From Botryllus schlosseri (Eukaryota): a stretch of 64,000 nt of DNA. A program made the position numbers and the translations under genes. Under the pieces are notes generated by a model. It did no database searches. It saw nothing but the letters and a program-made list of their open reading frames with translations, and was not told the origin of the DNA. The stretch is from contig CM119376.1 of the NCBI GenBank assembly GCA_051294905.1, positions 14,136,001 to 14,200,000 on the forward strand, read 5' to 3'. Positions 1,426 to 64,000 of the stretch are shown here, one piece after another; position 1 is the first letter of the stretch; every line of letters starts with the position of its first letter.

Positions 1426-3135
1426 GTTATTCAGTTTCTTTCATCCGTTTCATTAATTGTGTTCCTGTTTCTTAGTTTGAAATTATTTAGTCTCACTCAT
1501 TCGTTTCATTTGTTACCGGTATGTTCCTGTTTCTTACTTTGACATTATTATGCCATAAAATGCTGATAAAGTACATTATTGACGCATTGATTGGTAATTT
1601 GAAGAGGAATTATGTCCAAGAAAATGCTACTTAGTGGAGGACTATTTGAGAACCAAACCGGCCTATGTCCAAAATGGGGGCTGAAAATAGGGGTTGGTCT
1701 TATTTTGAGAAGCAAAAAATTATGCGATATGCCAGCTATATGCATATATATCAGTATCCCAGGAGCTCACTGCTGGCGTGTGGAGAGTGTGAGCATGATA
1801 ACTCTGGGAAATCTTCTTTTTCGATTATCTCAGCTCGCTGTTTTGTGACATAGCGCAGTTTGGTTTTCCAGCGACGATATATTATGCATCCTGTAAGACT
1901 GTAACCATAGTTTAAAAGCGTTTGAAATCTTCCCTTGTGTATATTCTGTTTGTTATTTATGTTCCGGTTGATGAAGAAATGAAATCTCTCTCTCTGTCTC
2001 ATTTGACGTTGTGACTTAATTTTTGGTTTTCCAATCGAATTTGTTGCAATTGGCCGCCACTCATTCCTAAATCACTTCAGGGTATTTCCGATTTGAGTAA
2101 TTTTTTATGTTTCCTTGATGTTATGCCTGGGGGCTTCAAGCTGAAGCCAATATTGTAAATTGCCCGCCATTATTGTTTAACAAAATTCACATCAGACCGT
2201 CTGTTATCTGATTTTTGTCATTCAGTTGCTCTTTACTAAATTCATGCCCATTTGGATCAGTGTTAGAGATGCTGAAGATTTATCATAGTAATATCGCTTA
2301 GAAATTGTGAAAGATACATTTGCTGTAGCCTGTAGAGATTCATGTTTTATGATGAAAAAATTGAATTGTCCATTGATGAGAATAACCAATGAGATTATGT
2401 TAATGCCAATAATGAAAACAGCAATCAGTGTCGCATGGGGCATACATGCTACATGCTCTTTCAAGCCTCGCAAATCTTCATGGTTCATCGATCTCTCGTA
2501 GTATTGAATTATGCTGTAGAAGTATTTGTGGAATTTCACTGTAGAGTTTGGAATGTGATTATATCTCTTATATCGTGTTTCTAAGAATCATACCCAGCTC
2601 TGGACAAACTGTTTACTCTGGTCTGCATATAGCAGGCAATGTTCTGAATTTGCTACTTCGTTGGGTTGTCTGAAGATGCTAACCACTGAGTTTGATTTTA
2701 GCTTGATGATGACCTGACGTCGAGTACAGACGGTACTGCGAGAGAGCTGTCCGCTTTATTGTCAAAACACCACATCAAAGTAAGCAGTATTTTACAGTGT
2801 ACTGCTGTATTAGATGCTTCAGATCCAATGTAACCGGATAGTGTTGTTGCAACTTGCATTCTATGTTTCTGCGGATTACAGAATCATAGATTTTCTGAAA
2901 ATACACAGCCGATTAATTTGTGCTCGTAACAGCTGTTTGTTCATGCTGAAATCGGGTCTACTTCTGTTGGATACAACTTGATAGATGACCCAAAATAGCG
3001 ATGTATGTCAAAAATGAACACAAATCTTATAAATAAGGACGATATGACAACCCTTATATCCCATGGTTTCATGTCCTACAGTGCTAGTATTAATGTAATA
3101 AGTCGTAATCGTAATGAGTCTTCGTTTATCGGCAG

Positions 3136-3432
3136 GGCCTTCTTCAATCGCACGACGGCGTGGCAGAATTCGCGTATGTGCCCCCACCTCACCCGAACAT
3201 CCCGTCCGCCGTTATGAACCCCGAAGACAAAGTTCTGCTGCAAAACGCGGCCAAATATACCACAAAACCAGCCAAAGTAGTGACTGTTACCAAAAATAAC
3301 GCTCCGTTAGGAGCGACTGTCCGTGTTGAAGAAGACGGCAACGTCATCATTAGCCGCGTTGTCGTCGGTGGGGCCGCGGAAAAGTCTGGATTACTTCAAG
3401 AGGGAGACGAGATACTCGAAGTAAACGGCAGG
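3136..3432 (+). CDS. PALS1: PALS1 exon: end of L27C and most of PDZ
   Basis: cag|GGC...AGG|gtatgt; [11 protein letters not shown]...LEVNGR. Confidence 0.88.
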
Positions 3433-6400
3433 GTATGTAAACATTCCGCAAATTCCGTTTTGTCGCGTCATAGTATGTATCATTTTGATGTCATCTGGCA
3501 CAAAGAAACAGCCGTGTGTTGTTTGGCTGGAGATATCATGTCCCAATTTTTGTGATGTAGAAATGTATCGTGGTAGTGAGCTGTGTTAGGGCTGTGTTTC
3601 TTTGTGATTTTTGCACTTTGTGCTTCTCTTTCAGACCATGAGAGGTTTCGATGTGAACGAAGTGGGCGACGCAATAGGCGCTATGTCTGGAACGCTCAAG
3701 TTTCTCATCATACCCGCCGACGGTAACGTTACTCGAAACGGGGGACATCCGGTTTTTGATATGAGTAAAGAGCCAGTCGTAAGTTTCCTTGGAGGTTGTT
3801 TTTCTTGTATTGTGCATCAGTTCCCAGATCTCTTCATTTTAATTTTGCCCGGTAGCCTACACTGCGCGTTGTGCCATGTGGATGTTGTAATGGGGCACGA
3901 GAGAAGTGTTGAAAATCATTTATTTTATTCAATTTTTCATTGGTTTAAGGTTTTTGCTCGTATCAACTTCCAAGCAAAATAACTCGGTCACTATCATTTA
4001 TTGGTAGGGCTCGACACAACGATTTGAGTACCGGTATGAATTACAATGAAAATATAGGTCTTCACATCAAGGCTTAATATCCATCGCTGTCGTCTCTAAA
4101 TCTCGGCTAGTCGTATCCAAGCTTCAGAAAACACGTAGCACAAGTCTATGAATGTACATGTACATTGTACAATGTGCATGGAATGACATTCTGTCAAGTT
4201 ATTGATCAAGCCTCACACTAGTCACAAAAGGCCACAAAATCGTTCTGTTCCCGAAAGAGTAAATCGTTTTGGATGACTTGAAACTGGCGATATTTTCTTT
4301 GTGGTGGCAAAAACTGGGCGTATCTGAACTTTTTCAGGTCATTATTTCTATTATTAGTACTAATAGGTGGTGCTCAATTACTCAATTCAACATGAAGCTT
4401 AATACTCGAATCTGAATCGAATCACCCAGGTACTCGATATTGCCCATCGCTACTTATTAGATATGCTATCTCAACTCCACACAGTTTTAACGAGTGCGTT
4501 TCTGCCAGCTAGAAAGGCTCTGAAAGAATTCTGACTTCAAGTGGATCCTTTGTTTAATTAGTCTGACCTGATCTTGCTATGGTAAGAGGATTTGATAAGA
4601 GTAGCGCTCTAGTTTTATTTTTCGTTACCATTAAGGATTGAGGTTATATTTGTTTGACTTTGAATTGATGAGATTTTATAATCACCTGGTGCAGGCCACA
4701 CTGTGGTGGTATTCACTGATCGACGGAAGTTACCGTCAGATCGATCTAATCCCGAACTCGAGACAAATTGACAGCGATAAAACACAGAAAAAGTTACGTC
4801 CCTAATCATTGGATTTGGATGTAACCGGAGGTTGTCAAAGTAGCCAGCGTTGTGTAAGAGGAAGTAGAAATTCTTATAATTTACAATTTGTACTTTATAA
4901 TTACAAGTAGAAATAGCAATTATATTATAACTACTTCAATTGGATGTAGAATATGAAAAGTACTCAATTAGGTAATTGCATGAAGTGAATTTGGCAAGGG
5001 TGACATATTTATAGCAGTTAATCCAAGGTGGCTACTTTCAAAATAACATGATTCTTCTTCACGAGTGATACAAAATGACTAATCACACTAAAAGGTACAA
5101 TCTTGGAATTTTTAGAATTTTAATGTTTTCAGTTACAGTGATACAGGAGGTATTTATGATATTTTCGCCCGTAACTGGGATGCTATCTTGTCCTAAACTA
5201 CCTTTTACTTTTCAAAATCCAAAGTAAAAGAGTAGGCAGTTTTTCCCAGAAACTGCTTCGGTCGAAGTGGACTTTAAAACAGTGGTTGTCAACCGCTGGT
5301 CCGTGGCAAGATATATTAGAATTTTATATCTCAATTTCAAAATACAGGGAGCTGGGCACTTCTCAATATTATAGAAATGAAACATCAAATTTTAAACTGA
5401 TTTAGAAGTGTGGGACGTAATTTTTGGATGGTGTCATTATAGAAAGTGCATGGTCTACTTCGGACGTTCATCACGATGGTACCAGCGTTATTAGAAACTG
5501 CTCAATAGTAGCCTACAACTCGCTTCAAAAAGGTTGAGAACCTCTGCTCTAAAAAGAGAACCGCTCCTTCTGTTTCAGACGCACGTCCGAGCGCTTTTCG
5601 ATTACGACGCGTACGACGACATGTTTCTCCCTTGCCGGGAGCTGGGCCTCTCTTTTCAAAAGGGCGACATACTGCACATCATGTCCCAAGACGACAGGGA
5701 CTGGTGGCAGGCTTATAGGGAGGGAGACCAGGACAACCTCACCCTGCCGGGCATGATACCCGCTCAGGACTTCTGGCATCAGTACGTTTTATATGTTCAA
5801 TACGTCAGAATTCGGTTGGAAAATATTCAGAATCAGAATTGTCAAGATTGGTCACATTATACACAAGAATGCGATGTATTGACCTCTGATCAAAACACAG
5901 ACTTGATGTCTTGTATGTTCTTGCTTTTGACGCTTCAGTGTGCTATCAAGCCTTCATTCATGATCTGAAAATCAACAACTGAATCAAAGAGCTTGCTGGG
6001 AATGATTGTTGGAGACATAGTATCAATGTAAATCGTTGACTTTTAGCTTACTCTGATGTCATATCTGAATTGATGGTCATTGTTGGAGTATTTGGTTGTG
6101 GTAAGGTGGTGTTCGTGAAGTATTGCATCACATTACATGTAAATAAAAATAAATCCAAGGAAACTTGTGGTACTGATCCTATTTGTAACCTGATTTGTTT
6201 TGCCTGAGTTCGCATTACTGATATTGTTAGCACTGCAAGGGGAGGCAGGCACTAGCCTACTAAGAAAGCTAAACGATATTCTCGTCAGTATTTTGGGATG
6301 ATATGAATAGGATTTCATGTTTGCTGCAGGCTCGAAGCGATCCGGATATCTCTGGAGAAGAAGGAGGAGGCGCCGGAGGAGAGGAAGAGCTTGATGTGCG

Positions 6401-9400
6401 GGAGGGGACGGAAGAAGAAGAACAAGAAGAAGAAAGGAAAGAAAAAGGACGTCGACACTGTCAGCGAAGGTAAGCTGCCTCTGTATCGAGTGATAGCTAT
6501 GCTTAGCGTATGTCCTCTCTTTAAAAGTAAACGGTCCTCCGAAGACGCTCACAAATGCCCACGCCCAAATGTCCTTTTTTCTGCATTTGAGTTTGTTGCT
6601 AATGCTTTGAACGAGACTTTTAGGTGATACGTTATAATCTTTATATTCATTTCCCAAAAAATTACTGTAGCCATGCAACGATGCTGAATTGTTTGTTTAA
6701 AAAATTACCCACAACTTTTCTGACGGAAGTTCGTACTTTATGATATTTCACGATGTTGTTTAAAAGGATGATTCTTTATTTGCTTTTAGCTGAGTATGGG
6801 AACCGCAAAGTATTAATGAATTTAATTTGTGTATTTTGTTTCTAATTTTTGCTTTGCTTTGTAACTGTAACTTTTGCCTTCAACTCCCAAGGAGATGTAA
6901 AACATCATCAAACTCAAACGTAACAACTCAATTTTTGGTATACTTGCCGGCAAAAAAATGTCTATTTTAGGGTGCTGAAAATATGGTAGGACTGTTGATA
7001 GCTTAATTCGAAATTTGTGTGATGTTCGCTTACGTGACGGTAATTTGGAAAGGGCATTGCGACAGGCATAGGCGCCGACTTTTTTTTTTACGAGGTGGCG
7101 AAGTCTTGTGACGTCATAATTGTTCCGTGTCGATGACGTCATCGTCGCACTAAAACGCACTTTCCTACATGCCGCTGGTGTACGTGCAGAGTACCAATCA
7201 CTGATTGATTGATTGATCAGCGTTAACCATTTGCGTTTTACGTTACGTTTTAATACCGACTCTGCACTCATTATTATCAAACCATGCTGTCGAGTGATTA
7301 AGTGGAATCTTCAAACGGTACGATCATTCGTCCGACGATGTATGCGGGCAATACCGACGATGTATACGGGCCTGTGCATTCCATCATCGAACAAAAATCA
7401 GAATTTACGTCGCCGAGAATTTGAAGTTGCATCAATGTTATCAACGCGCAATGCGTCTTGTGAGTAACGAAATACACCACGCACTGGGCTGGCAAGTTCG
7501 CAAGTAACACACGACAACTCTCGAATATGAGGTTTCAAACCGACAATAATGATGATTACAAACGTGAAATCACGCAGCTAATCAGCAATTGTCTCGTGCG
7601 GTTTCTGGCTTCGCATCGAGGAGCTCGCATCGCGGCAATTGTTTGCAGATTAAAACAGGGATTTTGGCGGCATTGGTGCATTTCCCGATTTATGTTCGCT
7701 AAGCATTTTTGGAGTACATCCAGGCGCGAAGCCAGGGGGTTTCGGGGGTCGAAAGCCCCTCCTTTGAAAGCGCGAATCCGCCACCTTAAACGCGAAACCC
7801 CGCCCTTTTCAAATGAGCGCTCTGACGCTAATACTCGGTTGCAATCAGACATGGGGTGATTACTTCACGAATGTAATCGATTGCGATTACGATTACTTGT
7901 GAATCCCGCGATTACGATTACGATTACAGCAAAATCAGAAAGTAGTCGATTACGATTACGATTACATTTCAAAAGTAATCACGATTACGCACGATTACAT
8001 TTGTTTTGCTTCTTGGAACTAATTTCAGAAGAGATATTGGAAGACAATACAAGGCTTGCGATGAAAAGGTCTAATGAGTTAACAACTTTCTTTATAAATC
8101 ATACGTCATTTGCTTGTTTCGTCATAATGAACCCATTGCCCAACTCTACGCAGGACTATTCGTCGCACCCAACGATTTGCATTGCCAGGTCCGTAATTGC
8201 CAGGCATTGCCAGGTCCGTAATTGCCACACCCCAAACTTCCCAATAGGACCGGGAGCGAGCTCTAAGGGGACTCAAAAGTATTTCGTAAATCAACATAAA
8301 TTATTATAGAGTATTTTCAAGAGAGTTAATTACCTTGAAAATTTTCTTCGAGCTTCGGGATTTAATGTCTCTAAATAGCTTGATTTTGAAATTCTTACCT
8401 CTCCCCCCAAGAAAAAAAGCAAGCATAATTTATAGGAATAGGCATTTCGGTGGCGGTTATTGCTCCGCCACGACACACCAAAAGACGTATGCAATTTCGG
8501 CCAACATACAACCCCACAAAGTGTGGTACCAAAGAATGACCTTCGTGCCAAAACTTTTGATATGTGTCCGTTGCCAGTAGCCGCGCTCTGTGGGCATGAC
8601 GAATAGTCCGTTCCTTCCAATCTGAGCCCCAATAATGCCAATGCCACCCGGGGTACCCACAGAGGAATGAAGACATGACTGTTTGTGTGTGCGTCTCACG
8701 AAAGTTTTTATTTAGTCTGCTACGTTTGGGCGACTACAGTATCTTTTGATTATATAAAAAACGGGAGGTCACGAATCAACAACATAAAATAAAGTAATTA
8801 TAACAACTTACCAGATGCTATAATTATGAATTACGTGCCCCCCAGCTCTACCGGTAAGTCTGAATTAATAGCAATATAATGTAATTACCAATATTATTGA
8901 CGAAATTCAGTCATCGACTTGAAAACTGACCACCCTATGGGGCCCCAATACCCAGGATTGTAATGACTCGAGTCATGACTCGACTCGAGTCGCGATGTTT
9001 TGGTGACTAGACTTGACCCGAGTCATTTTTTCAAATGCGTAAATTGACTCGACTTGTACTAGAGTCATTTTGCATGACTCGAGCCAAGTCATATGACTCG
9101 AGACTAGAACGGCCAAGACAGACATTCCACGTAACTTCGAAGAATAGTAAAGTTACCACATTATTTGTATTTCGTCTATCGGTCCTGATACTTGGAAATA
9201 GGGCCCATAAAAAGTGAAAACTGATGAAAATTACGATATTATGTATACGAGCCATTCTATATCACTCGAGCATAGTTGAAAAAGGGGGGTTGAACCGGAT
9301 TGATCTGAAAACTGATCTGTGAACATAACGACTTGAGGCATCGCACACGAGCCAAACACCATGACTCCGACTCGTCCATATACTAGCTGACTTGGACTCG

Positions 9401-12400
9401 GACTTGACTGGAGGTGAATTGAAAATGACTCGACTTGACTCGAGTCAAAACTATAAAATTGCGATTGACTTGTGACTCGGAACATTGTGACTTGGTTACA
9501 ACCCTACCAATACCAACGTTGGGAGTGGGGCACGAATTGCTGTTTTGGTCCTTATTGTACCTACAACCCACGCTAACATGGTGTATAAGCGGATGGCCGT
9601 GGCGACAGGTATAAATCTCGAGTGAAGAACTATGAAATAACGATCGGCGCCCGTTTCAAGTGGAGTCATATGAGAATAAGATAAAGTGAACCTAAAATTC
9701 TACTTTACACTTAATACAGATACTTAAACCTGCCGTTACGAGAAACAGCAAAGAACGGGTCGGTTATGATATATATCACCAGCTGTTGATTTTAACCATC
9801 GTAATGTTTTATTTGAGTACAAAATTTCAAATCTTTGTCCGGTGTACGTACAATACATACGTATACTACGTAGATAGGCCTACTGCTCGCCAAGCAGCAA
9901 CGGTCAAACTGCGTTTAACTAAGCATAACCAAACATCAATACATAAGCTACTATTTGAAACTAGGCAGAGTGGTGATTATTATCTTGCTGCGAGGTAGTG
10001 GCGTCTGGAGTGTATTGATAACCTGATATACAGCATGGCTCACACTGTTCTAACAATAACACAACAATGTACATCGAATATATATTTAACTACGTGTGGA
10101 TACTTCTTACGGAAGGACGGGCAAAGCTAATACTTATGACGTAATAATGAGCCGTGGCGTTTGAAAATCAACCGTTCGCGCTATCAATAAGCCCATTTAC
10201 ATGGTCAAGTCGTCTTGAAGCCAAGTCGTCTTGGAGTGACGTCATGAGACGGCTTGCCAAAGTGATCGCGTTTACATGGTCATGTTTATCGCAGCTCGAG
10301 TGATACACAGCACTGTGGGATTCAGCTCGGGAATGTGCTACGGCAGTTGATATATCCAGAAATACTTCAACACAATTCTAGAATGACCAAATACACCGTG
10401 TATATATTCTTTCTGATAGTGAGTTGGGCAAGTTATATTGCTGGCTGTACTCGCTTCATAAGTTGTGTTGCTGAACAAATAAGACCACGTGCATATTATA
10501 AAAGCAGTATCATGTACTGATAGAGCTTTCATATTAACCCAGTTGAAAAAAAGTTGTTCAACTGGGTGAATGTGAAAGCTCTATCAGTACATGGTACTGC
10601 TTTTATAATATGCACGTGGTCTTATTTGTTCACCGTCACAACTTATGAAGCGAGTACAACCAACAATATAACTTGCCCAACTCACAATCAGAAAGAATAT
10701 ATACACGGCGTATTTGGTCATTCTAGAATTGTGTTGAAGTATTTCTGGGTTTCTCAACTGCCGTAGCATATTCCCGAGCTGAATCCCAAAGTGCTGTGTA
10801 TCACTCGAGATGCGATAAACATGACCATGTAAACTCGATCACTTTGGCAAGCCGTCTCATGACGTCACTCCAAGACGACTTGGCTTCAAGACGACTTGAC
10901 CATGTAAATGGGCTTAATAACCTGGTATAACATCTCTTCCTTGTTCACGAATGTTCGGTAATGTCATATTCATTGTACAAATAAAAAGTAATCGTTCTTT
11001 CACAAAGAAATCGATTAGATATGTGAAGTAGTCGATTACGATTACGATTACTTTTGATTTTTTTCGAATGTAATCGATTGCGATTACGATTACTTGAAAA
11101 TGCTGTAATCGTCGTAATCGATTACGATTACTAATCGCGATTACCCCATATCTGGTTGCAATTCAGTCGTATTATCAGTGTTACGCGCGGCCAATTAACG
11201 AAAGGCGTGTCGACAATAAGCGAGATTCGTCCGTACGCATTGCACTGCACAATGTAACGCGACACGATCTCCCGCTGAGAGAATTGCAAAATTAGGTCAT
11301 TCATTGCCCCGCGCTCGGCAATTGCTGGTAGCCTCATTTATCGCGTCACCTACAAGCCTAATTCCACTGGCTTGAATAATCGCATCTGCAATAGGCCGGG
11401 TGCGCACGATATCATCGTTGGCTTACAAAATCGCATCTGCATTGGCTTGGTGCACACGAGATCATCACTGGCCTACACAATCGCATCTGCAATAGGCCTA
11501 GTACGAAAGATGTCGCTAGCCTAACTACCGCGTCTCGGGCCTACCATGCTTTGGCTCCTACTTCCCGATGGCGATAGCTTGGATAAAATGCCGTTAAGTG
11601 TATGCTGATTAGCGATTGTGGTTAAAGAGTGACTTCGCGAAACTGAATGACATCGAATGTCCGCAAACATGTGCGACGCGTGCGTACATGCGTAATTGAT
11701 TCCCGCTAATACTTGAGCATAACCATCAGAAGCTGTGATAAGGCTTGAGTTATAAAAGAAGAAAGGTTTGAACCACCTGAAATCGGCGTCATTGTAGCAC
11801 ATATTCCAAATAAACTGGTACATTTTGACTTGCGCAAATCGTCGCCAAGGCTACATAAGACGTAGGACGCATTGATAAGCGCGCGTATTTAATTGTTCAC
11901 GACCGATCAGGTAGTCGCTAATTAACAGCACTTCCGGACTAGTCGACAAGCTTATCATACGAGTATGCCGTATAATCATCAACACGATGATATCGTGCAC
12001 AACAGGCAGAAGCCGCCAATGCAGATGCGATTGCGTAGACAAGCGATGATATAGTTTGAACTGGGCCTATTGCAGATGCGATAAATCAGGCTGGCGACAA
12101 TTGCCACGCGCAAGACAATGACTGACCTAATTTCGCGACCATCTCAGCGGGATATCATCACAGACTCTTCGCGCTGATTGAAAACTTGCCTGTCGCAAAT
12201 TGGGCGCACGAACACTGATAATACAATTATTGAATTGCAACTGAATATATGATTTAATATTGTCATTTCAAAATGACGGGGTTTCGCGTTTCAAACAGGG
12301 GGATTCGAACCTCCTGGCTACGAGCATGGTACACACGCGTATAAATAACTAAGACGTCTCTAAGGATGTCGCATCGATTCGCCTGATTACTAATTACTGG

Positions 12401-15400
12401 TTACAAACAACTTATGCGTTTTGAGCATTTCGTACGAGGTGGCCGCCACCTCGGAATGTTCAATGAGAAGCTTAAGAGTTCATTTTTTTGGTGATTATGC
12501 TGACAAAGTTGTACCTCCTGAACTGCAAATATGCTTGTTGGGCCGTAGAAAGTACTAGTTTCTTACTCAACTGGTGTTGCAGTATAAATAAATGAAGATT
12601 ATAATCAAATAGATTTTTCAAATTGTTGTATCGGTATCGACTCATTATTTCAATTGTGATCATGCTCCAATTGTGACAATTTGCCTGTCATTTCAAGCAT
12701 TTTCAAGGGAATTGTGGTTTGGCCAACCTGGGCTAGTTCTATGTTGATGGGCGAAATGGGCTTTCAGACCTTGTTTCGAGTTTTTAGTCATCCTTCCCGT
12801 AGTAGTAAGTGGTACCGGTAGGCCTATCTTTGTTTCGTTATCATTTGGTGCGATGTGCAGACCGGCGGTATTATGAAAATTTCAGAAGGAGACGAAATCG
12901 AAGTGTACGAAGAGATGGCTTTGTACCATCAGCCGGAAACGAAGAAGAGGCCGGTCGTGCTTATCGCGTTGCCGAATGTCGGCCGACATGAACTGCGTCA
13001 GCGGTTGGTGGAAAACGATCGCGACCGGTTTTCATTTGCCGTGCCACGTAAGTCTTTACTTAGGCTTTGCTTGTCCTGGATGATGTGCAACGTTTTTGTA
13101 AAATCTGCCAAACGAAATGGAGTAAGCCAAGGCACTGGCACATATAATGTCTTTCCTTTGGCGTTAATGCCGTGTCTCTGTTATACGTACTCCCTGTTGC
13201 AATTAAGGCTGAGCGCACCAATTCGATTACTCTAATCCGATTTGAGTATCAATTGTAATGATTCGATTCGATTTTTCTCAATCAGTATAAATATACGCCT
13301 TTTGCATTTAAGAGTTATTTTGTCAACAAAAAAACACTGAACTCCTTCCCGTCGTTGGGAGCATTCAAACCTCGATTGGCGGTATCACACTGTCCAACAC
13401 ACGTAGCCTGTTATCGGAAACGGTGTTTTTGGGTAATGCCGATCTAAGCACAGCATTGTCACAAAGCGCTGTGGAATAGTTTTGGTTAAGAAACACAAAA
13501 ATATTTTTGATGTGACGTAAGGTTGGTGTTATTTTCTTTGTGGTAGCGAAACGGTAGCCTGCGCATTTAGACTTACGAAGTCGTCTATTCCGCCTTGATG
13601 TCACGCTAGGTGATGCTCAAATGCTCGAGAGCGGAATCGAATCATCCAGTGCTCAATATTCTCCAGCCCTTAATTGCGATGCCATTTTTTGCGATTTTTA
13701 CATTTTCCGTCAGCACGCACAAATAACGTAATTCAATTCAGACACAACGCGGGCAAGACACGCCAACGAGGTCGAAGGCGAAGATTATCACTACGTCCCG
13801 GTCCACGAATTCGAAGAGATGATCACCAACGACGAGTTTCTCGAGCACGGGTCTTTCGAAAAGAATCTCTACGGCACCACGATACAGGCGGTCCAAACGG
13901 TCATCGACTCTGGGAAGATCTGCATTCTCAATCTCCACGCCGAGGTGCGTTGTGATCATATACAAAATCTACTGCCCATCATCAGAATTACAGGCTGATC
14001 ATTTGAGGACATGCCCAAATTTCAACGTTGTCTGTTACCCAGGGTTGCCACACCCTCCTCATTTAATTGATTTTGTCCTGTTGCTGAAGTGTGATGTGTC
14101 GTAGAACACCACCATCTTTCATAAGCACTGATATTTATTTGTTTCCTGGCTGGTACTCAAGACCCGTTTATAGACACTCATATGTTAACACAGGAATTGA
14201 GGGGATGATAAAAAGATATTAATGATTCAGGGCTACCAACAAAGAAAAGTTTCTTGCGCGTTGCCTTTTGTATCATTAAAATATCTAAACTTCCCTTCTT
14301 TGGAGATATCACGGATTGGCTATGGAAATGCTCTGGTTTTCAGGATAAATCAGAAGTATATCTAAGCTACGCAAGATCCAAAACATAAGATCTAGTGTAC
14401 ATGCACAACTCAACTTATCAATAAAGCATTGCTGTATGCCGAGCTTTATAAATTATTATATTATTGGTATGCTCGTCATATCATATGACCGCATATTATG
14501 GTGTATTGATTTAATAACGTATTCTTATAATAGCAACAAGCATTTTCACAGTGGAATTTGTCGATTTCAGTCTGGTTTAGTCTTGCCATTACCATTTCAT
14601 TGTAAGTTACGTACATCCTGTAGTGTGTGCCAAGCATGCGTGAAATTGAATCAATTATCCTGGCACCCTTCACCATCACTTCCAGGGTGAGAATAATCTC
14701 ATAATAACCCGTTCCAGAACTATTGGATAGAGAGTTGCTGGAATACAACACATTATGAAGTGGAACTGGTGATTCTATCACTTGTTATTATCTATCCATT
14801 TCCCAAGTAGAGACTGCCATTTGCTAACATTCTTTAGCTGGTAACACACTTACCCGAATACGCTGCAAGCAAACCGTTTGATTTTGAAAGAACTGTCGTC
14901 GCATTGCTCTTTATTTTACAGTCTTTCATAGTGGGCTCATGCTTGAGAAATTAGATTACTTGATGCGTCAGCACCGAATAATCAGCGCCAACCTTGGACA
15001 TCAATATCGCTCTGGCATCACTTTACTTATAAGAAAGAGTCGTAGTGCCAGCCGACAATATTCGGGTTCATTTCCATATGAATATACTATTTGATTGTGT
15101 ATTGAAGTTCTGTACCTCCAAGAAGCTCTTCATGTCATTCTATGCATCCTTAATTCCTTTGGCATTTCATCAGGGTTGTAACCAAGTCAGAAGGCTCCGA
15201 GTCACAAGTCAATCTCACTTTTATAGTAAGTCGAGTCGTTTTCCATTCACCACCGAGTCCAAGTCATCGATCAGAGGTTCGAGTCCGAGTCATGGTTTTA
15301 TGACTCGAGTCCGAGTCATTGTAGTGACTGCTCAGTTTCCAGTTAAAGTCTTGTTAACCCACTTTTTATAACTCTGTTATGTGTGATATCGAATGGTTCG

Positions 15401-16208
15401 CATTCAACATATACTAATTTTCCTCACTTTTAGCAGTTTCTTGTCGCATTTCAAACACAAGTACTAATAGACGAAATCCCAATAGTCTTTATACTATTCT
15501 TCGAAATTCAAATGAAATGTAGGTTCAAGTCGAGTCCAAGTCGAGTCAATAGACAGATTGACTCGAGTCGAGTCATTTCTGAATTTTGCGAAAATGACTC
15601 GAGTCATTACAACTCTGCATTTCATGCGCAGAGCGCCGCATCTACTAATAAGATGAATTTCAGATTCAAATCCGGAGTTCATTCATTCCAAAACCTGATT
15701 GTTTTGTGGTAAAGACTGAAATTTTATGCGCAAATTGGCAAAATCATAAATCTGAATCTGGCACACAATCTCCAAATCCAGATTTCCCAAACCTCGACAC
15801 ATGTCCATCTCTGTTAGAAAATATATTGGCGATGCAAATTTTTGAAGCTCTCTCAGCATGTCGCCCCCGAAGCACATCCACTTCACATTGGCATTTACTC
15901 GAGGTTTCAACTCTTTTCAGTCGCTGAGGCGCTTGAAAAGCACGTCGCTGAAACCGTACATCATCTTTATCGCACCGCCTCCGCTGGAAAGGCTACGCCA
16001 AAATGTCTCGAAAGAAGGCAAGCAGATGAAGGAGGAGGAACTGCGTAAGATCATCGAGAGCGCTCGCATTGTCGAGTCCAAGTACGCCCACCACTTCGAC
16101 GAGATCATACGCAACACGGACCTCAGCCGATCGTACGCCGAGCTGCTGCGGCTCATCAACAAACTGGATACTGAACCGCAGTGGGTGCCTGCTGCATGGC
16201 TGGATTGA
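3136..16208 (+). CDS. PALS1: PALS1/MPP5 (stardust-like) MAGUK, 5'-partial (upstream L27 exons not identified in the window)
   Basis: join(<3136..3432,3635..3778,5579..5781,6330..6469,12886..13047,13742..13944,15921..16208) = 1437 nt. All introns GT-AG, phases consistent. PDZ PLGATVR...[23 protein letters not shown]3 [16 protein letters not shown]...WWQAYREGD and C-terminus [17 protein letters not shown] closely match vertebrate MPP5. Confidence 0.92.
3635..3778 (+). CDS. PALS1: PALS1 exon: PDZ C-terminal half
   Basis: tttcag|ACC...GTC|gtaagt; [10 protein letters not shown]...GTLKFLIIP. Confidence 0.88.
4005..4452. mobile_element. hAT-type MITE, family TAGGGCTG / GAGTAC-TACTCG
   Basis: Termini tagggctc...catcgcta; degenerate 8-bp TSD tttattgg/cttattag. 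Right end (aatcgaatcacccaggtactcgatattgccc) is shared with 13204-13672 and, inverted, with 35020. Confidence 0.55.
4826..5250 (+). mobile_element. AGTA-rich MITE remnant (CAGAGGTGGTCAAAGTAG family)
   Basis: Start ccggaggttgtcaaagtag resembles 21709 and 35966; dense AGTA/TACT motifs; right end unclear. Confidence 0.4.
5280..5546. mobile_element. Charlie/Buster-like hAT MITE
   Basis: TIRs cagtggttgtcaacc / ggttgagaacctctg; TSD ctttaaaa/ctctaaaa. Confidence 0.75.
5579..5781 (+). CDS. PALS1: PALS1 exon: SH3 domain
   Basis: tttcag|ACG...CA|gtacgt; [10 protein letters not shown]...GMIP. Confidence 0.9.
6330..6469 (+). CDS. PALS1: PALS1 exon: Lys-rich HOOK region
   Basis: ctgcag|G...G|gtaagc; LEAIR...[18 protein letters not shown]; phases 2 in, 1 out fit the neighbours. 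Confidence 0.85.
8953..9506 (+). mobile_element. hAT MITE, GACTCGAGTC family (copy 1)
   Basis: TIRs caggattgtaa / ttacaacccta; perfect TSD CCAATACC (8945-8952, 9507-9514). Confidence 0.88.
10189..10915. mobile_element. 727-bp near-perfect palindromic (foldback) MITE
   Basis: Arms of ~359 bp with about 17 mismatches by manual count and a 9-nt loop (10548-10556). Termini aagcccatttacatg / catgtaaatgggctt. TSD is ambiguous: AAT, or TA if the ends are trimmed by one base. Confidence 0.9.
12886..13047 (+). CDS. PALS1: PALS1 exon: start of guanylate kinase-like domain
   Basis: tttcag|AA...C|gtaagt; [21 protein letters not shown]...ELRQRL...DRFSFAVP. Confidence 0.88.
13204..13672. mobile_element. 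hAT-type MITE, same family as 4005-4452
   Basis: Termini taaggctgag / ctccagccctta; degenerate TSD gttgcaat/attgcgat. Confidence 0.65.
13742..13944 (+). CDS. PALS1: PALS1 exon: GuK core
   Basis: attcag|AC...GAG|gtgcgt; [19 protein letters not shown]...[12 protein letters not shown]...SGKICILNL. Confidence 0.9.
15171..15617 (-). mobile_element. hAT MITE, GACTCGAGTC family (copy 2, inverted)
   Basis: TIRs cagggttgtaa / ttacaactctg; perfect TSD CATTTCAT (15163-15170, 15618-15625). Confidence 0.88.
15921..16208 (+). CDS. PALS1: PALS1 last coding exon
   Basis: tttcag|TCG...TGA; [11 protein letters not shown]...[22 protein letters not shown]. Confidence 0.92.
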
Positions 16209-19562: not shown

Positions 19563-20966
19563 ATGATGGATAGGTCTATGCAAAATCTTAGAAAGCGGCT
19601 GCAGTCGATCAAAGTTAGAGATGCAGTGTTATGTTTAGGACTGCTGTGGTTGTTACGAACAATTTACGGTCGCACCTACACGGAAAAGAAGCACAAGTTC
19701 GAGGAACTCGGCGAAGACAACGTGGAAAATCAGTGGGATAATATCGAGACTGTTCTCGTAGCATCAAGACATCATCGAGTTCCGTTACTTTTGTTTGACA
19801 TCGACATACTGCCAGAAATCTTCGTCGAGAGAGAATCGAGTTGGAACGATAAACTACATAGGTGCAAGGTGGTATGTAAACATCATCCAGAGGAGAAGAA
19901 TGTCATTACATTCGCAGCGCTGGCCTGGAAATTTCAAAAATCAAAAGATGAATTTATGGACGCACTGACTGACTTGGGTTTTGTGGTATCCCTGTCGGAA
20001 GTGGTAGACCCAAGGATTCCGAAGGACGGTAGCGAATTGGCAATGACACCATCGTATCTGTGGATGGCTAGAAACGACCACATCATTCACATTACGTTCT
20101 TGCACGAACGAGGGGAAGAAATCAAATATCTTTGGGTTGCACCGGTTTCGGATAGAGAATGGAAACGCACCGTGCGGACTTTGGCACCGATGCTGAGCGA
20201 TGGTTGGCATTCGCTAGATGCTGTGGGCGCAAAGTTTCCCAGATACGCCCAGGCTTACGATTTGTCCCATCGCTTTACAGGCCTGCCTGTTCATTTGGAC
20301 GGCCATCGTATTTCAGTACCGTATCACATCAAATCGTTTTTGAACGAATATAGACACTCGCGCTTCATTGAATGTGGACGCCCTGGCGCGCTGGAAAGAC
20401 GAAGCGATACCATCGTACAGCAGAAAAGCGACCTTCACCGATCCCGTTTAGCCATAACGATGTTAACTGGAATTAAAAAGGCATTCGAAATGGCGAGAAA
20501 GCCGTTCTGGATCACTGGCGGAACCTTGCTCGGATGGTATCGTCAATGCGCACTCATAAGTCACGATTCCGAGTTGGATATCGCCATGTGGACCAGGGAC
20601 TTGGATGAAAAGGTCATTAGCGACATGGAATATAGAAATTTTACGGCCAAATTTGACATGAACGCTGCACGCGCGGGGGGAGACGCGTATTTTCTCAACA
20701 AGAAAGGAAACCGAGTGAATTTGCTGTTGTTCGACCAGGAGGGCGACATAACTCGTAACATCAGAACTCGGACTGAAGACGGGCAAAAATTTCTCTTGAC
20801 TTACCCGACCTTTCAACTTTGCTGGAGTGAACTCGTGGGGATGAAGCTGCGAGTACCGTGCGACTCTTTGGAGTATCTTGAGAGTTATTTTGGAGATGGG
20901 TGGCGTACGCCAAACTTGGAATGGGTCTGGCACATCAATGCCGCTAATGCAGCCGAAATACGATAG
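19563..20966 (+). CDS. FKTN: Fukutin-like protein (type II membrane, LicD/nucleotidyltransferase fold), single coding exon, 467 aa
   Basis: N-terminal signal-anchor (DAVLCLGLLWLL). Fukutin-like motifs VPLLLFD, DPR, FLHER..YLW, HSRFIEC, PFWITGGTLLGWYRQC, FQLCWSELVGMKLRVPCDSLEYLE.YFG.GW.TP..EWVW. AATAAA at 21192-21197. Strict orthology to FKTN is unproven. Confidence 0.88.
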   Translation: MMDRSMQNLRKRLQSIKVRDAVLCLGLLWLLRTIYGRTYTEKKHKFEELGEDNVENQWDNIETVLVASRHHRVPLLLFDIDILPEIFVERESSWNDKLHRCKVVCKHHPEEKNVITFAALAWKFQKSKDEFMDALTDLGFVVSLSEVVDPRIPKDGSELAMTPSYLWMARNDHIIHITFLHERGEEIKYLWVAPVSDREWKRTVRTLAPMLSDGWHSLDAVGAKFPRYAQAYDLSHRFTGLPVHLDGHRISVPYHIKSFLNEYRHSRFIECGRPGALERRSDTIVQQKSDLHRSRLAITMLTGIKKAFEMARKPFWITGGTLLGWYRQCALISHDSELDIAMWTRDLDEKVISDMEYRNFTAKFDMNAARAGGDAYFLNKKGNRVNLLLFDQEGDITRNIRTRTEDGQKFLLTYPTFQLCWSELVGMKLRVPCDSLEYLESYFGDGWRTPNLEWVWHINAANAAEIR

Positions 20967-27485: not shown

Positions 27486-52816
<25,331 letters not shown>

Positions 52817-61567: not shown

Positions 61568-63401
61568 AACTAGACTGTTGTCTTTGTGCGAAGAGACTGA
61601 AGGATCCTGTGCTAGCCGCAAACAGAGCGCGAGATGAGAGTGTTGGAGTCGGTGAGACGGGAATGGATGTGTCTGCCCCATTATTGACACACAGAACAGC
61701 AATTTAAAATGTTGGAAACATTTTTATTTTCCAAATAAACATCCTTTACGATGATTGGCTTGGTGTTAGCCAATGCTGCGAGGTAAGGTTATCGATATCT
61801 TACAATGGGGTACATCAAACTGCGCGGCGATCAGTAGTGAGAGTAGGATTTACAATTTTTTCCACGAGTAGTTTTGGTGGGTAGATAGCCCAGCTTCCTG
61901 TCATCTGCGGGGAAGATTCTTTGCCCATGTTGCAAGTGCCTTTGCTCTTTCTTCTTCATCAAAATACCAAATGGTCACTGCAAACCTGCAGTACACAATT
62001 AGAATTTAGAAATGTGGTAGTAGGCAAGGATTCTTCAGAAGCAGCTAAGGATACGTAATCTGCATCCGTTTTGCAGGATATGACATGGCCTACCGTATAT
62101 TATTAATTCTAGATTGAACTGACCGCTACAAACAGCTGTTTGTGGAAAGTTCAAATAGTTACCTTTTATGTGACCAGAACGATTATAATGCCGACTATAT
62201 AACATATGTTATTTGGTGAAATTTACCTTTTGTGACAATGTTGCGACGACCTCACATGTCTGACGTGTATAGCTTTGTAGTACATGATGTCTTGGATGCT
62301 TATACTCTTGGATACAGCTTTCCACAGTGGAATATAGTATCGGAATCATTTTTTCAATCAAATTCTTAGTTGATTTATCAACCAACTGTGGCAATCTCAC
62401 TACTGGACTCGACCATTTTACCCAGCCCTCATTGCTGAGCATGCCTAGATTTGATTATGAACCTTCGTTAGGGACTCTTTGATTTAAGTATACCTCTTCG
62501 CCACATTTACGTGCGATCTTTGTGGTGCGACTAATAAGCACAAAGATGAAGTGTATGCAAATCAGCTTGATTGGCAGTTGCGTCTAGTTCTACATCAAGG
62601 CCTTGCCCGAGGTGACGATATTTACGCAAATATATTTAATCGGGATCAGAATCTGAAATAGCGTTGCCGGCTTGGCAAATTGAAGCATGCGATGCTCATG
62701 ATTGAAAACAGTTATCTTCAAACAAAATATCTGTAACACAGAATTTAACAGAGCACTGGCCATACTATGCAATGAAGACTCCCATAATCGAATTTCAAAT
62801 TGGAACTGTTCAAGACAATCGCTGCACAGTGCAACAATGGGTACCAATAAGTGTCGGTTTTAGTTGGTAAGAATGCGCACTTGAACAGAGATCAGAAACA
62901 TGCATATGTTGGTAATATTAGAGCATTGAAAGGAACAGATCACAGTCATTCTACTATTGCCTGAAGACTATTAGTTCATTGCATATGGTCGATAAGATTT
63001 ACTAAGTGCATTCGGGACTACTTTAGACACCGCTATAGGAGGGTTTTTCTATGATAATCATGACGCAAAATATGAGAGCCACTCGTGTAGTGCAGGCCAG
63101 GGACTGGCAGCATACGACCCATGGGATTCTGATCGGAAGCAGACTATTCACTATTATGTTTTGTGGACTAAAAATGTTAGAAGCCTGAAAATTTTATATA
63201 GGTATCCTTGAACAAGTCCAAGTTTGCCCACCTCAAAAATTATTATTGTCATGAATTCACCGACTAAACTAACGTATGCATACATTTCCAAAATAAATTC
63301 ATGATTAATGTATTCAGGAATCCAGCTCGCCAAATACTTGATCTACCTATATCAGTATAGAAAAGTTTCCCAACCCTGACATAGTAGGCTATGTTAATAT
63401 C

Positions 63402-63914
63402 CAGGGTTGTAATGACTCGACTCAAGTCAGGATTTTCTGTTGACTCGAGTCATTTTCTCAAAATACGGAAATGACTCGACTCGAGTCCATCCGTGTATTG
63501 ACTCGACTTGGACTCGAGTCATTGCGCATGACTCGAGACGCAGACGGCCAAGACCGATATTTCATTGTAATTTCGAAGAATAGTAAAGTAATTAAACTAT
63601 AGGGATTTCTTCTATTGGTACTGGTACTTGAAAATACGACCAGAAACTGCTAAAAGTGAGGAAAATTAGTATATTATAAATGCGAACCATTCGATATCAC
63701 CAAACAGAGTTGTAAAAGGCGGGTTTAACAATACTTTAACAGGAAACTGAGCAGTCAACACAATGACTTTGACTCTACTCGAGTCATAATACTGTGACTC
63801 GGACTCGACCCTCTTTTCGCTGACTTGGACTCGGTGGTGATTTAAAAATGACTCGACTTGACTCGAGTCAAAACTATAAAACTGAGATTGACTTGTGACT
63901 TGGTTACAACCCTG
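63402..63914 (+). mobile_element. hAT MITE, GACTCGAGTC family (copy 3)
   Basis: Perfect 11-bp TIRs cagggttgtaa / ttacaaccctg; perfect TSD TTAATATC (63394-63401, 63915-63922). Confidence 0.92.
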
Positions 63915-64000
63915 TTAATATCACAAATAAAGCTCTCACCGCTCTGCAAATGCAGGAAGTACTTCGTGTGGATTTCTGCTGTCGGAATAAAACAATAAAA

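What the first reader, a model, noticed from the sequence alone, without database searches (positions are those of the whole stretch)
7721..12328. Four-level nested transposon stack filling a PALS1 intron, with insertion order readable from TSDs
Seen: (1) an outer hAT-like MITE, 7721-12328; (2) a TA-flanked foldback element, 7834-12245, inside it; (3) a 3.3-kb hAT element, 7846-11154, inserted 12 bp inside the left TIR of (2) with perfect TSD GTTGCAAT; (4) two further elements inside (3): a GACTCGAGTC MITE (8953-9506, TSD CCAATACC) and a 727-bp palindrome (10189-10915). Five different families occupy 4.6 kb of a 6.4-kb intron. Inference: this gives a relative activity order for the families and suggests a targeted or tolerated insertion hotspot. 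Insertion into a TIR would also immobilise element (2).
Basis: seen in the sequence. Interest (0 to 1): 0.72.

Follow-up and report, generated by a model that had tools for sequence, protein, structure and literature searches.

The report
Transposon nest, mostly inherited pre-assembled
The transposon stack in this PALS1/MPP5 intron is real, but three of its five layers were already built into two composite non-autonomous elements that spread genome-wide as units, so the intron took at most three insertions and is an ordinary nest, not a hotspot.

Summary
The reading of five stacked local insertions does not hold.

- **True outermost element.** It is an unreported ~2.13-kb non-autonomous element with 8-bp TSDs, at 7067-7845 plus 11163-~12456. 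Its terminal inverted repeats (TIRs) are CATAGGCGCCGAC/GTCGGCGCCTATG. The window copy has lost about 55 bp, including the right TIR.
- **Layers 1 and 2.** Ten fetched genomic copies contain both layers as internal sequence. The layer 1/layer 2 junction is spanned in all 40 best genomic matches, down to 85% identity.
- **Element 3 (7846-11154).** This is a true insertion. The other copies of the outer element show the exact empty site with one GTTGCAAT. Element 3 belongs to a 2.58-kb family, and every copy checked already carries the GACTCGAGTC MITE with its TSD CCAATACC.
- **Palindrome (10189-10915).** It is the only other insertion private to this copy. The empty site GCTATCAATAACCTGG occurs in 8 copies, and the TSD is AAT. 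It is a one-off inverted dimer of the left 360 bp of a 587-bp MITE.

So one to three events happened here. Divergences (about 2-3% each) do not contradict the order but do not resolve it. Public read data were swamped by paralogues.

The scan has already described a similar ordinary hAT nest elsewhere in this genome. This is known biology and of low interest.

The parts
5573..5779 (+). SH3-domain exon of the host gene (MPP5/PALS1-like MAGUK)
   Evidence: phmmer against PDB: MAGUK p55 subfamily member 5, E 2e-27
6330..6469 (+). Likely basic 'hook' exon. AG acceptor before 6330 and GT donor at 6470, which starts the intron holding the nest
   Evidence: Read from the sequence. The exon limits are inferred, not tested
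7067..7845 (.). Left part of the true outermost element ('layer 0'): a ~2.13-kb non-autonomous element with 8-bp TSDs and left TIR CATAGGCGCCGAC
   Evidence: Ten other genomic copies start at exactly this base with unrelated flanks. Eight show the matching right TIR, with 8-bp TSDs that are perfect in six and 1 base off in two
11163..12456 (.). Right part of layer 0. Homology stops at about 12456-12459. The last ~55 bp, including the right TIR and the TSD copy, are missing
   Evidence: Other copies run on to ...GTCGGCGCCTATG. The window has no second copy of that terminus and no nearby second GCGACAGG
7721..7833 (.). Inherited internal sequence of layer 0 with MITE-like inverted-repeat anatomy
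   Evidence: Present at the same place in all ten fetched layer-0 copies. Inverted repeat with 12248-12328 scores 23.5 against 4.3 +/- 1.9 for shuffles
12248..12328 (.).
7834..7845 (.).
   Evidence: Contiguous with 11163 onward in all other layer-0 copies
11163..12245 (.). About 280-bp inverted arms, TA on both sides. Inherited with layer 0
   Evidence: The layer 1/layer 2 junction is spanned in all 40 best genomic matches down to 85% identity. Arm alignment. Divergent layer-2-like copies lie in other contexts: L035 518-1040 and window 51078-51535
7846..11154 (.). Element 3: a copy of a 2.58-kb non-autonomous hAT-like family (TIR CAGACATGGGGTGATTAC) plus the palindrome. TSD GTTGCAAT at 7838-7845 and 11155-11162
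   Evidence: Exact empty site in ten layer-0 copies. Seven other copies of element 3 have their own perfect 8-bp TSDs. No Pfam match in its ORFs
8953..9506 (.). GACTCGAGTC MITE (TIR CAGGATTGTAA / TTACAACCCTA, TSD CCAATACC). Inherited internal part of the element-3 family
   Evidence: Present in all nine aligned copies of element 3; the right-hand CCAATACC is intact in all nine, the left-hand one in five and 1 base off in four. Solo members of the MITE family have their own 8-bp TSDs
10189..10915 (.). 727-bp inverted dimer of the left ~360 bp of a 587-bp MITE (TIR AAGCCCATTTACATGG). 3-bp TSD AAT at 10186-10188 and 10916-10918
   Evidence: Empty site GCTATCAATAACCTGG in 8 copies of element 3. 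Canonical 587-bp copies with 3-bp TSDs. The centre junction is unique among 40 scored loci. The arms differ at 18 sites
12870..13034 (+). First guanylate-kinase-domain exon of the host gene, downstream of the intron
   Evidence: phmmer against PDB: MPP5 residues 179-226, directly following the SH3 match, E 1.4e-13

Best explanation
The intron of an MPP5/PALS1-like gene holds an ordinary nest of non-coding cut-and-paste DNA transposons. Most of its apparent depth was inherited, not made here.

**Shown**
- A 2.58-kb hAT-like non-autonomous element (element 3) carries the GACTCGAGTC MITE, with that MITE's own TSD, in every copy examined.
- Element 3 interrupts layer 0 only in this copy.
- A rearranged MITE (the palindrome) interrupts element 3 only in this copy.

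**Inferred**
- The old nests formed once, in the founder copies of the two composite families. A transposase supplied in trans then copied them as units, recognising only the outer TIRs.
- In this intron, layer 0 arrived first, element 3 landed in it, and the palindromic MITE derivative landed in element 3. A deletion also removed layer 0's right end.
- Both arms of the palindrome break at the same position of the canonical 587-bp element (within about one base). It therefore most likely arose in a single fold-back (snap-back or template-switch) event on one element, and the arms later diverged by 5%.
- Later insertions fell into transposon DNA because, once layer 0 arrived, that was most of the intron and it is free of selection. 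No targeting is needed.
For: **Layer 0**
- Ten copies share the limits 7062/7067 to 12456 with element 3 absent.
- The left end is sharp, with unrelated flanks. Full copies end in the inverted TIR, with 8-bp TSDs such as TATACAGT, TGCATGAT, GAACAGAC, TGTATAGG, TATAGGCC and ATATGAAA.

**Layers 1 and 2**
- The layer 1/layer 2 junction is spanned in all 40 best matches, from 100% down to 85% identity.

**Element 3**
- More than 30 loci match query 1-2345 followed directly by 3071-3309, that is, with the MITE and without the palindrome.
- Seven other copies have perfect private 8-bp TSDs.
- The MITE's CCAATACC is kept in those copies: intact on the right in all nine aligned copies, and intact (five) or 1 base off (four) on the left.

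**Palindrome**
- Empty site in 8 copies.
- Canonical 587-bp family with a 3-bp AWT TSD.
- No other locus spans the centre.
- Arms have 7 and 11 private changes and no shared derived changes.

**General**
- Substitution divergence from the family majority is 2.9% for layer 0 and 2.35% for element 3. The palindrome arms are at 1.9% and 3.1%.
- No Pfam domain in any ORF of the block.
- Precedent for a nested element spreading inside a MITE: MER6 (PMC6887750).
Against: - Only the 40 best of hundreds to thousands of candidate loci are scored per search, so founder copies lacking the cargo could exist unseen.
- No solo copy of layer 1 and no clean TSD for it were found. Its status as a former transposon rests on inverted-repeat anatomy alone.
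- Cut-and-paste elements leave no donor copy. 'Private to this copy' therefore does not prove that element 3 or the palindrome inserted at this locus. A composite could have moved here whole.
- The divergence figures overlap and come from small samples biased toward the copies nearest the window.
- The palindrome centre was not verified in reads.
Confidence: 0.8

Rival explanations
1. One reading: five families inserted one after another at this spot, marking a targeted or tolerated insertion hotspot in the intron.
For: All five sets of inverted repeats, and the TSDs of four of them, are present at the stated coordinates.
Against: - Layers 1 and 2 occur in the same arrangement, inside the same larger unit, at 10 or more other loci. 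Their junction is spanned in 40 of 40 best matches.
- The MITE occurs with the same TSD in every copy of element 3 examined.
Confidence: 0.03
2. Fewer local events than three. The composite layer 0 + element 3 (+ palindrome), or element 3 + palindrome, was assembled at another locus and moved here whole by cut-and-paste, leaving no donor copy.
For: - These are cut-and-paste elements.
- The private junctions have no second copy that would fix where they formed.
- The divergences of all three layers are about equal, at 2-3%.
Against: - It is less parsimonious, since larger non-autonomous elements usually move less well.
- Layer 0's right end is missing here, so its arrival as an intact 5.4-kb unit cannot be checked.
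Confidence: 0.15
3. Layer 1, and less likely layer 2, was never a separate transposon. The inverted repeats are internal structure of layer 0 that arose some other way.
For: - No solo copy of layer 1 in held sequence or by an exact hairpin-pattern search.
- No founder copy of layer 0 without it.
- No clean TSD.
- Layer 1 is always joined to layer 2.
Against: - The two halves of layer 1 are inverted repeats over their full length, with 20-bp termini matching 17/20 in the family majority. Layer 2 sits between them at a TA.
- Layer-2-like sequence occurs in unrelated contexts, with about 2,500 first-look candidates against about 330 for layer 1.
Confidence: 0.2
4. The 727-bp palindrome is an assembly artefact (a fold-back chimeric long read), not real DNA.
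For: - Near-perfect palindromes with a tiny loop are a known long-read artefact (general knowledge).
- No read or contig bridging the centre was shown.
- The junction is unique in the genome.
Against: - The arms differ at 18 of 360 positions. Each difference is private to one arm against the family majority.
- The whole palindrome is bounded by a clean 3-bp TSD of the type the family makes. An artefact would give identical arms and no TSD.
Confidence: 0.06

Closest known systems
Non-autonomous hAT elements and hAT-type MITEs (maize Ds-like, mammalian Charlie/MER-type)
   Same: - 8-bp TSDs in every copy checked.
- Short TIRs of 13-18 bp and subterminal short repeats (GATTACGATTAC in element 3).
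- No coding capacity.
- Many dispersed copies with private TSDs.
   Different: - Only the GACTCGAGTC MITE has the usual hAT terminus (CAGGG...). Layer 0 starts CATAGG and element 3 starts CAGAC.
- No autonomous partner or transposase was sought or found, so the superfamily call rests on TSD length. P-type and Merlin-type elements also make about 8-bp TSDs.
Composite MITEs that spread a nested foreign element, such as human MER6 (mariner MITE carrying a V-SINE domain; PMC6887750)
   Same: An element that once inserted into a non-autonomous DNA transposon is afterwards amplified only as its cargo. All copies therefore show the same fossil junctions.
   Different: - Here the cargo is itself DNA-transposon/MITE-like (two layers deep in layer 0).
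- The MITE's original TSD is still readable inside the element-3 family.
Nested transposon insertions used for relative dating (as in maize intergenic nests)
   Same: - An inner element interrupts an outer one and has its own TSD.
- Removing it restores the outer element exactly.
   Different: - Here these are DNA transposons, not LTR retrotransposons, so there is no internal LTR clock.
- The order holds per element, not per locus, because composites move as units.
Foldback-type and 'double Ds'-type inverted derivatives of DNA transposons
   Same: - Two copies of one transposon end in head-to-head orientation with almost no spacer.
- Outer termini intact, flanked by a normal TSD.
   Different: - It is a single instance derived from a non-foldback 587-bp MITE with a 3-bp AWT TSD.
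- It is not one element inserted into another, because both arms break at the same internal position.
- No family of such dimers was found.

Membership tests
hAT superfamily (element 3, GACTCGAGTC MITE, layer 0) | 8-bp target-site duplication at independent insertions | tested here: met
   - Layer 0: eight copies with both flanks visible, six with perfect and two with 1-base-off 8-bp TSDs.
- Element 3: window plus 7 copies, all perfect.
- MITE family: window 63402-63914 (TTAATATC) and L016 (TGTATATC).
hAT superfamily (element 3, GACTCGAGTC MITE, layer 0) | Short TIRs with the usual 5'-YARNG start | tested here: inconclusive
   Short TIRs are present in all three. CAGGG (MITE) fits. CAGAC (element 3) and CATAG (layer 0) each depart at one position.
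hAT superfamily (element 3, GACTCGAGTC MITE, layer 0) | Autonomous relative with the same termini that encodes a hAT transposase (BED finger / DDE / hAT dimerisation domain) | not tested
   No ORF in the block has a Pfam match.
Tc1/mariner-type (Stowaway-like) MITE, for layer 2 | TA target-site duplication at independent insertions, plus TIRs | tested here: inconclusive
   TA flanks and long TIRs are seen, but it is one inherited insertion shared by all copies. The divergent copy in L035 has a terminus too decayed to read a TSD.
PIF/Harbinger-type (Tourist-like) MITE, for the palindrome's 587-bp family | 3-bp TSD, typically TWA (TAA/TTA) | tested here: not met
   The TSD is 3 bp, but it reads AAT or ATT (AWT) in 6 of 9 clean copies, within a CAWTG-like target. 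The superfamily is left open (the length would also fit CACTA or Zator types).
Foldback element family, for the 727-bp palindrome | A family of mobile copies that all have long inverted arms | tested here: not met
   All other scored loci are canonical non-palindromic copies that stop at the breakpoint. None spans the centre.
Transposon insertion hotspot | More independent local insertions than neutral expectation, or repeated use of one target | tested here: not met
   At most three local events. Two of them fell in pre-existing transposon DNA, which made up about 2.1 kb of a ~3.1-kb intron after the first event.

The most novel reading that the evidence does not exclude
The 727-bp palindrome records the birth of a foldback-type element from an ordinary MITE. 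A single snap-back or template-switch event at position ~360 of a 587-bp element produced a symmetric dimer with two functional left ends, which then transposed (3-bp TSD AAT) into element 3. If so, aberrant repair of MITEs would be a source of long-hairpin, potentially small-RNA-producing loci inside introns in this genome.
Probability: 0.2. Interest if true: 0.3.

Novelty: new member of a known kind. Interest (0 to 1): 0.13.

Why it matters
The main value is a caution for reading transposon nests. TSD-bounded layers give the order in which elements entered one another. They do not show that each event happened at the locus in view, because non-autonomous composites carry fossil nests wherever they go.

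For annotating this genome, the work yields:
- limits, TIRs and TSDs for three repeat families (the 2.13-kb composite, the 2.58-kb composite and the 587-bp MITE with a 3-bp TSD);
- one unusual inverted-dimer derivative.

It has no evident bearing on the function of the MPP5/PALS1 gene, apart from enlarging one intron from about 1 kb to 6.4 kb.

Tried and rejected
- **Public reads and contigs.** Four runs from three organism labels were laid on 6900-12700 to look for empty-site alleles. Only 100-200-bp contigs from paralogous copies were laid. The joints 7845>11165 and 10186>10917 simply reflect other genomic copies, so nothing locus-specific could be read.
- **Solo copy of layer 1.** An exact hairpin-pattern search found 0 hits.
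- **Founder of layer 0 without layers 1 and 2.** An exact pattern search found 0 hits. Both this and the previous search are exact-match only, so they are inconclusive.
- **Right half of layer 1.** The search found no solo copy: its full-length hits lie in layer-0 copies and the rest are partial matches. The 85%-identity copies of the left half (one checked, further 85-88% loci) proved to carry layer 2 as well.
- **Rfam scan of the window.** No hits.
- **Pfam scan of the eight longest ORFs in the block.** No hits.
- **Second copy of layer 0's terminus or TSD downstream.** None found, so the right end is deleted rather than displaced.
- **Earlier notes of the scan.** Nothing on this stretch.
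- **Divergence as a clock.** The values overlap at 2-3%, so I rejected using them to date the layers.
Full report
**What is in the sequence**

- **Element 3** (7846-11154) has TIRs CAGACATGGGGTGATTAC / GATTACCCCATATCTG and a perfect GTTGCAAT on both sides.
- **Layer 2** (7834-12245) is TA-flanked and has inverted arms of about 280 bp.
- **The GACTCGAGTC MITE** (8953-9506) is flanked by CCAATACC.
- **The palindrome** has arms at 10188-10550 and 10554-10916 that are 95% complementary with a 3-nt gap.
- **Layer 1** has halves at 7721-7833 and 12248-12328 that are inverted repeats over their whole length. The alignment score is 23.5, against 4.3 +/- 1.9 (maximum 11) in 300 shuffles. Its flanks give no convincing 8-bp duplication, at best 6/8, even in the majority sequence of nine aligned copies.

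**Gene context**

The gene context holds.
- The ORF piece 5573-5779 matches the SH3 domain of MAGUK p55 member 5 (MPP5/PALS1) at E 2e-27.
- The piece 12870-13034 matches the residues that follow directly in the same PDB chains, at E 1.4e-13.
- A likely small basic exon ends at a GT donor at 6470. An AG acceptor lies at about 12850 or 12874. This gives an intron of about 6.4 kb on the + strand.

**The outer limits are wrong, and layers 1 and 2 are inherited**

The window's own assembly is 495.5 Mb, and the window lies on contig C6.
- I searched it with the 113-bp left half of layer 1. This gave 334 first-look candidates and 40 scored matches.
- In ten fetched copies, homology to the window does not stop at 7721/12328. 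It runs from 7062/7067 through 7845 and straight on from 11154 to 12456, with 7846-11154 missing.
- The left end is sharp at 7067 (CATAGGCGCCGAC...), with unrelated flanks in every copy.
- Full copies end about 55 bp beyond the window's last homologous base, in ...GTCGGCGCCTATG.
- Their 8-bp TSDs include TATACAGT, TGCATGAT, GAACAGAC, TGTATAGG, TATAGGCC and ATATGAAA. Two more copies have TSDs one base off.

This is therefore a ~2.13-kb non-autonomous element of the 8-bp-TSD (hAT-like) kind, which I call layer 0. The window copy has lost its right TIR and the second TSD copy.

All ten copies contain layers 1 and 2 in the same arrangement. I then used an uninterrupted copy (L011) as a query spanning the layer 1/layer 2 junction. 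All 40 best genomic matches, from 100% down to 85% identity, cross that junction.
- I found no solo copy of layer 1.
- I found no layer-0 copy without the cargo. Both of these pattern searches were exact-match only.
- Layer-2-like sequence does occur in unrelated contexts, at L035 518-1040 (78% identity) and window 51078-51535. It has about 2,500 first-look candidates.

Layer 2 is therefore plausibly a former transposon. Layer 1 remains an inference from its anatomy.

**Element 3 is a true insertion, but it brought the MITE with it**

The ten layer-0 copies show the exact empty site with one GTTGCAAT.
- Searching the genome with 7846-11154 gave more than 30 loci that match query 1-2345 followed directly by 3071-3309.
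- These are ~2.58-kb units that include the GACTCGAGTC MITE and lack the palindrome.
- Seven of them have perfect private 8-bp TSDs: ACATGCAC, ATCGAGAA, ATCGTTAT, CTCGAGTC, ACGACGAC, GTCCACGC and ATCAGTAT.
- Nine aligned copies keep the MITE: the right-hand CCAATACC is intact in all nine, the left-hand copy in five and one base off in four.

The MITE therefore entered the founder of this family once.

The MITE family itself is real and abundant, with 6,521 first-look candidates. Solo members carry their own TSDs:
- window 63402-63914, TTAATATC;
- L016, TGTATATC.

No ORF in the whole block has a Pfam match. Rfam finds nothing in the window.

**The palindrome**

Eight copies of element 3 read GCTATCAATAACCTGG where the window has the palindrome. 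This fits a 727-bp insert, AAGCCC...GGGCTT, with a 3-bp TSD AAT.

One arm used as a query finds 171 candidates at 94-98% identity. Those loci are not palindromes.
- They are 586-588-bp elements with TIRs AAGCCCATTTACATGG / CCATGTAAATGGGCTT.
- Their 3-bp TSDs read AAT or ATT.
- Their first ~360 bp equal the window's arm. They then continue with sequence that the window lacks.

A query across the palindrome's centre finds no other locus that spans it. All 39 other scored loci stop at the breakpoint.

Against the majority of nine canonical copies, the arms carry 7 and 11 private changes and no shared derived change.
- Both arms break at the same canonical position, within about one base. This points to a single fold-back event on one element rather than two independent truncated copies.
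- The 18 differences and the clean TSD argue against an assembly artefact. I could not confirm the centre in reads.

**Order, age and 'hotspot'**

Substitution divergence from the family majority:

| Layer | Divergence |
|---|---|
| Layer 0 | 2.9% |
| Element 3 | 2.35% |
| Palindrome arm 1 | 1.9% |
| Palindrome arm 2 | 3.1% |

These values do not contradict the nesting order and do not resolve it. The samples are small and biased toward the copies nearest the window.

The transposon block (7067 to ~12459) is 5.4 kb, or 84% of the intron. Without it the intron would be about 1 kb.
- After layer 0 arrived, about two thirds of the intron was transposon DNA.
- Two further hits inside that DNA therefore need no targeting.
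- These are cut-and-paste elements, so a private junction has no surviving donor copy. Composites could have arrived whole, which puts the number of events at this locus between one and three, not five.

**Reads**

Contigs from four public runs under three organism labels were laid on 6900-12700.
- Coverage came from tens of thousands of short paralogous contigs.
- Joints that skip 7846-11164 and 10187-10916 were seen, but these are what the other genomic copies give.
- No contig reached the unique flanks, so no empty allele at this locus can be claimed or excluded.
- The same families are present in runs under all three organism labels.

**Comparison with what is known**

- Nested DNA-transposon insertions, and composite non-autonomous elements that amplify a captured element as cargo, are well known. 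MER6, a mariner-derived MITE carrying a V-SINE domain, is a documented case (PMC6887750).
- Inverted 'double' derivatives are known from Ac/Ds, and foldback elements are also known (general knowledge).
- The scan's own notes describe another ordinary hAT nest elsewhere in this genome (s1-268367).

The finding is a correct anatomical observation with an over-reading of its history. The only mildly unusual item is the one-off inverted-dimer MITE.

**Limits of this work**

- Only the 40 best candidates are scored per genome search.
- No repeat database (Repbase or Dfam) could be queried, so I cannot say whether these families already have names.

Noticed in passing
window 63402-63914: Solo member of the GACTCGAGTC MITE family (about 72% identical to 8953-9506). 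Canonical termini CAGGGTTGTAA / TTACAACCCTG and a perfect 8-bp TSD TTAATATC at 63394-63401 and 63915-63922.
   Followed up: partly
window 15171-15618: Another diverged copy (about 69-76%) of the same MITE family, on the minus strand. Its limits were not worked out.
   Followed up: no
   Followed up: partly
L036 (G000:C8:14752366-14755725), about 911-2090 on the minus strand: Two canonical 587-bp MITEs of the palindrome's family in direct tandem, sharing a single ATT between them.
   Followed up: partly
L027 (G000:C11:18650659-18655993): A copy of element 3 inserted into a GACTCGAGTC-family MITE (TSD CTCGAGTC), the reverse of the nesting inside element 3. The two families have therefore hit each other more than once.
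   Followed up: no
L018, L019, L020 (layer-0 copies): These copies are 2.5-3.0 kb instead of 2.13 kb because of further private insertions at other internal positions. L012 and L018 carry deletions across the right end of layer 1.
   Followed up: no
window 8974-9426, seen in read joints: Many contigs in all four runs skip about 433-451 bp inside the GACTCGAGTC MITE. This points to an abundant short (~100-bp) deletion derivative of that family.
   Followed up: no
window 19563-20966: Another first-stage note on this window reports an intronless fukutin-like gene there. I did not examine it.
   Followed up: no
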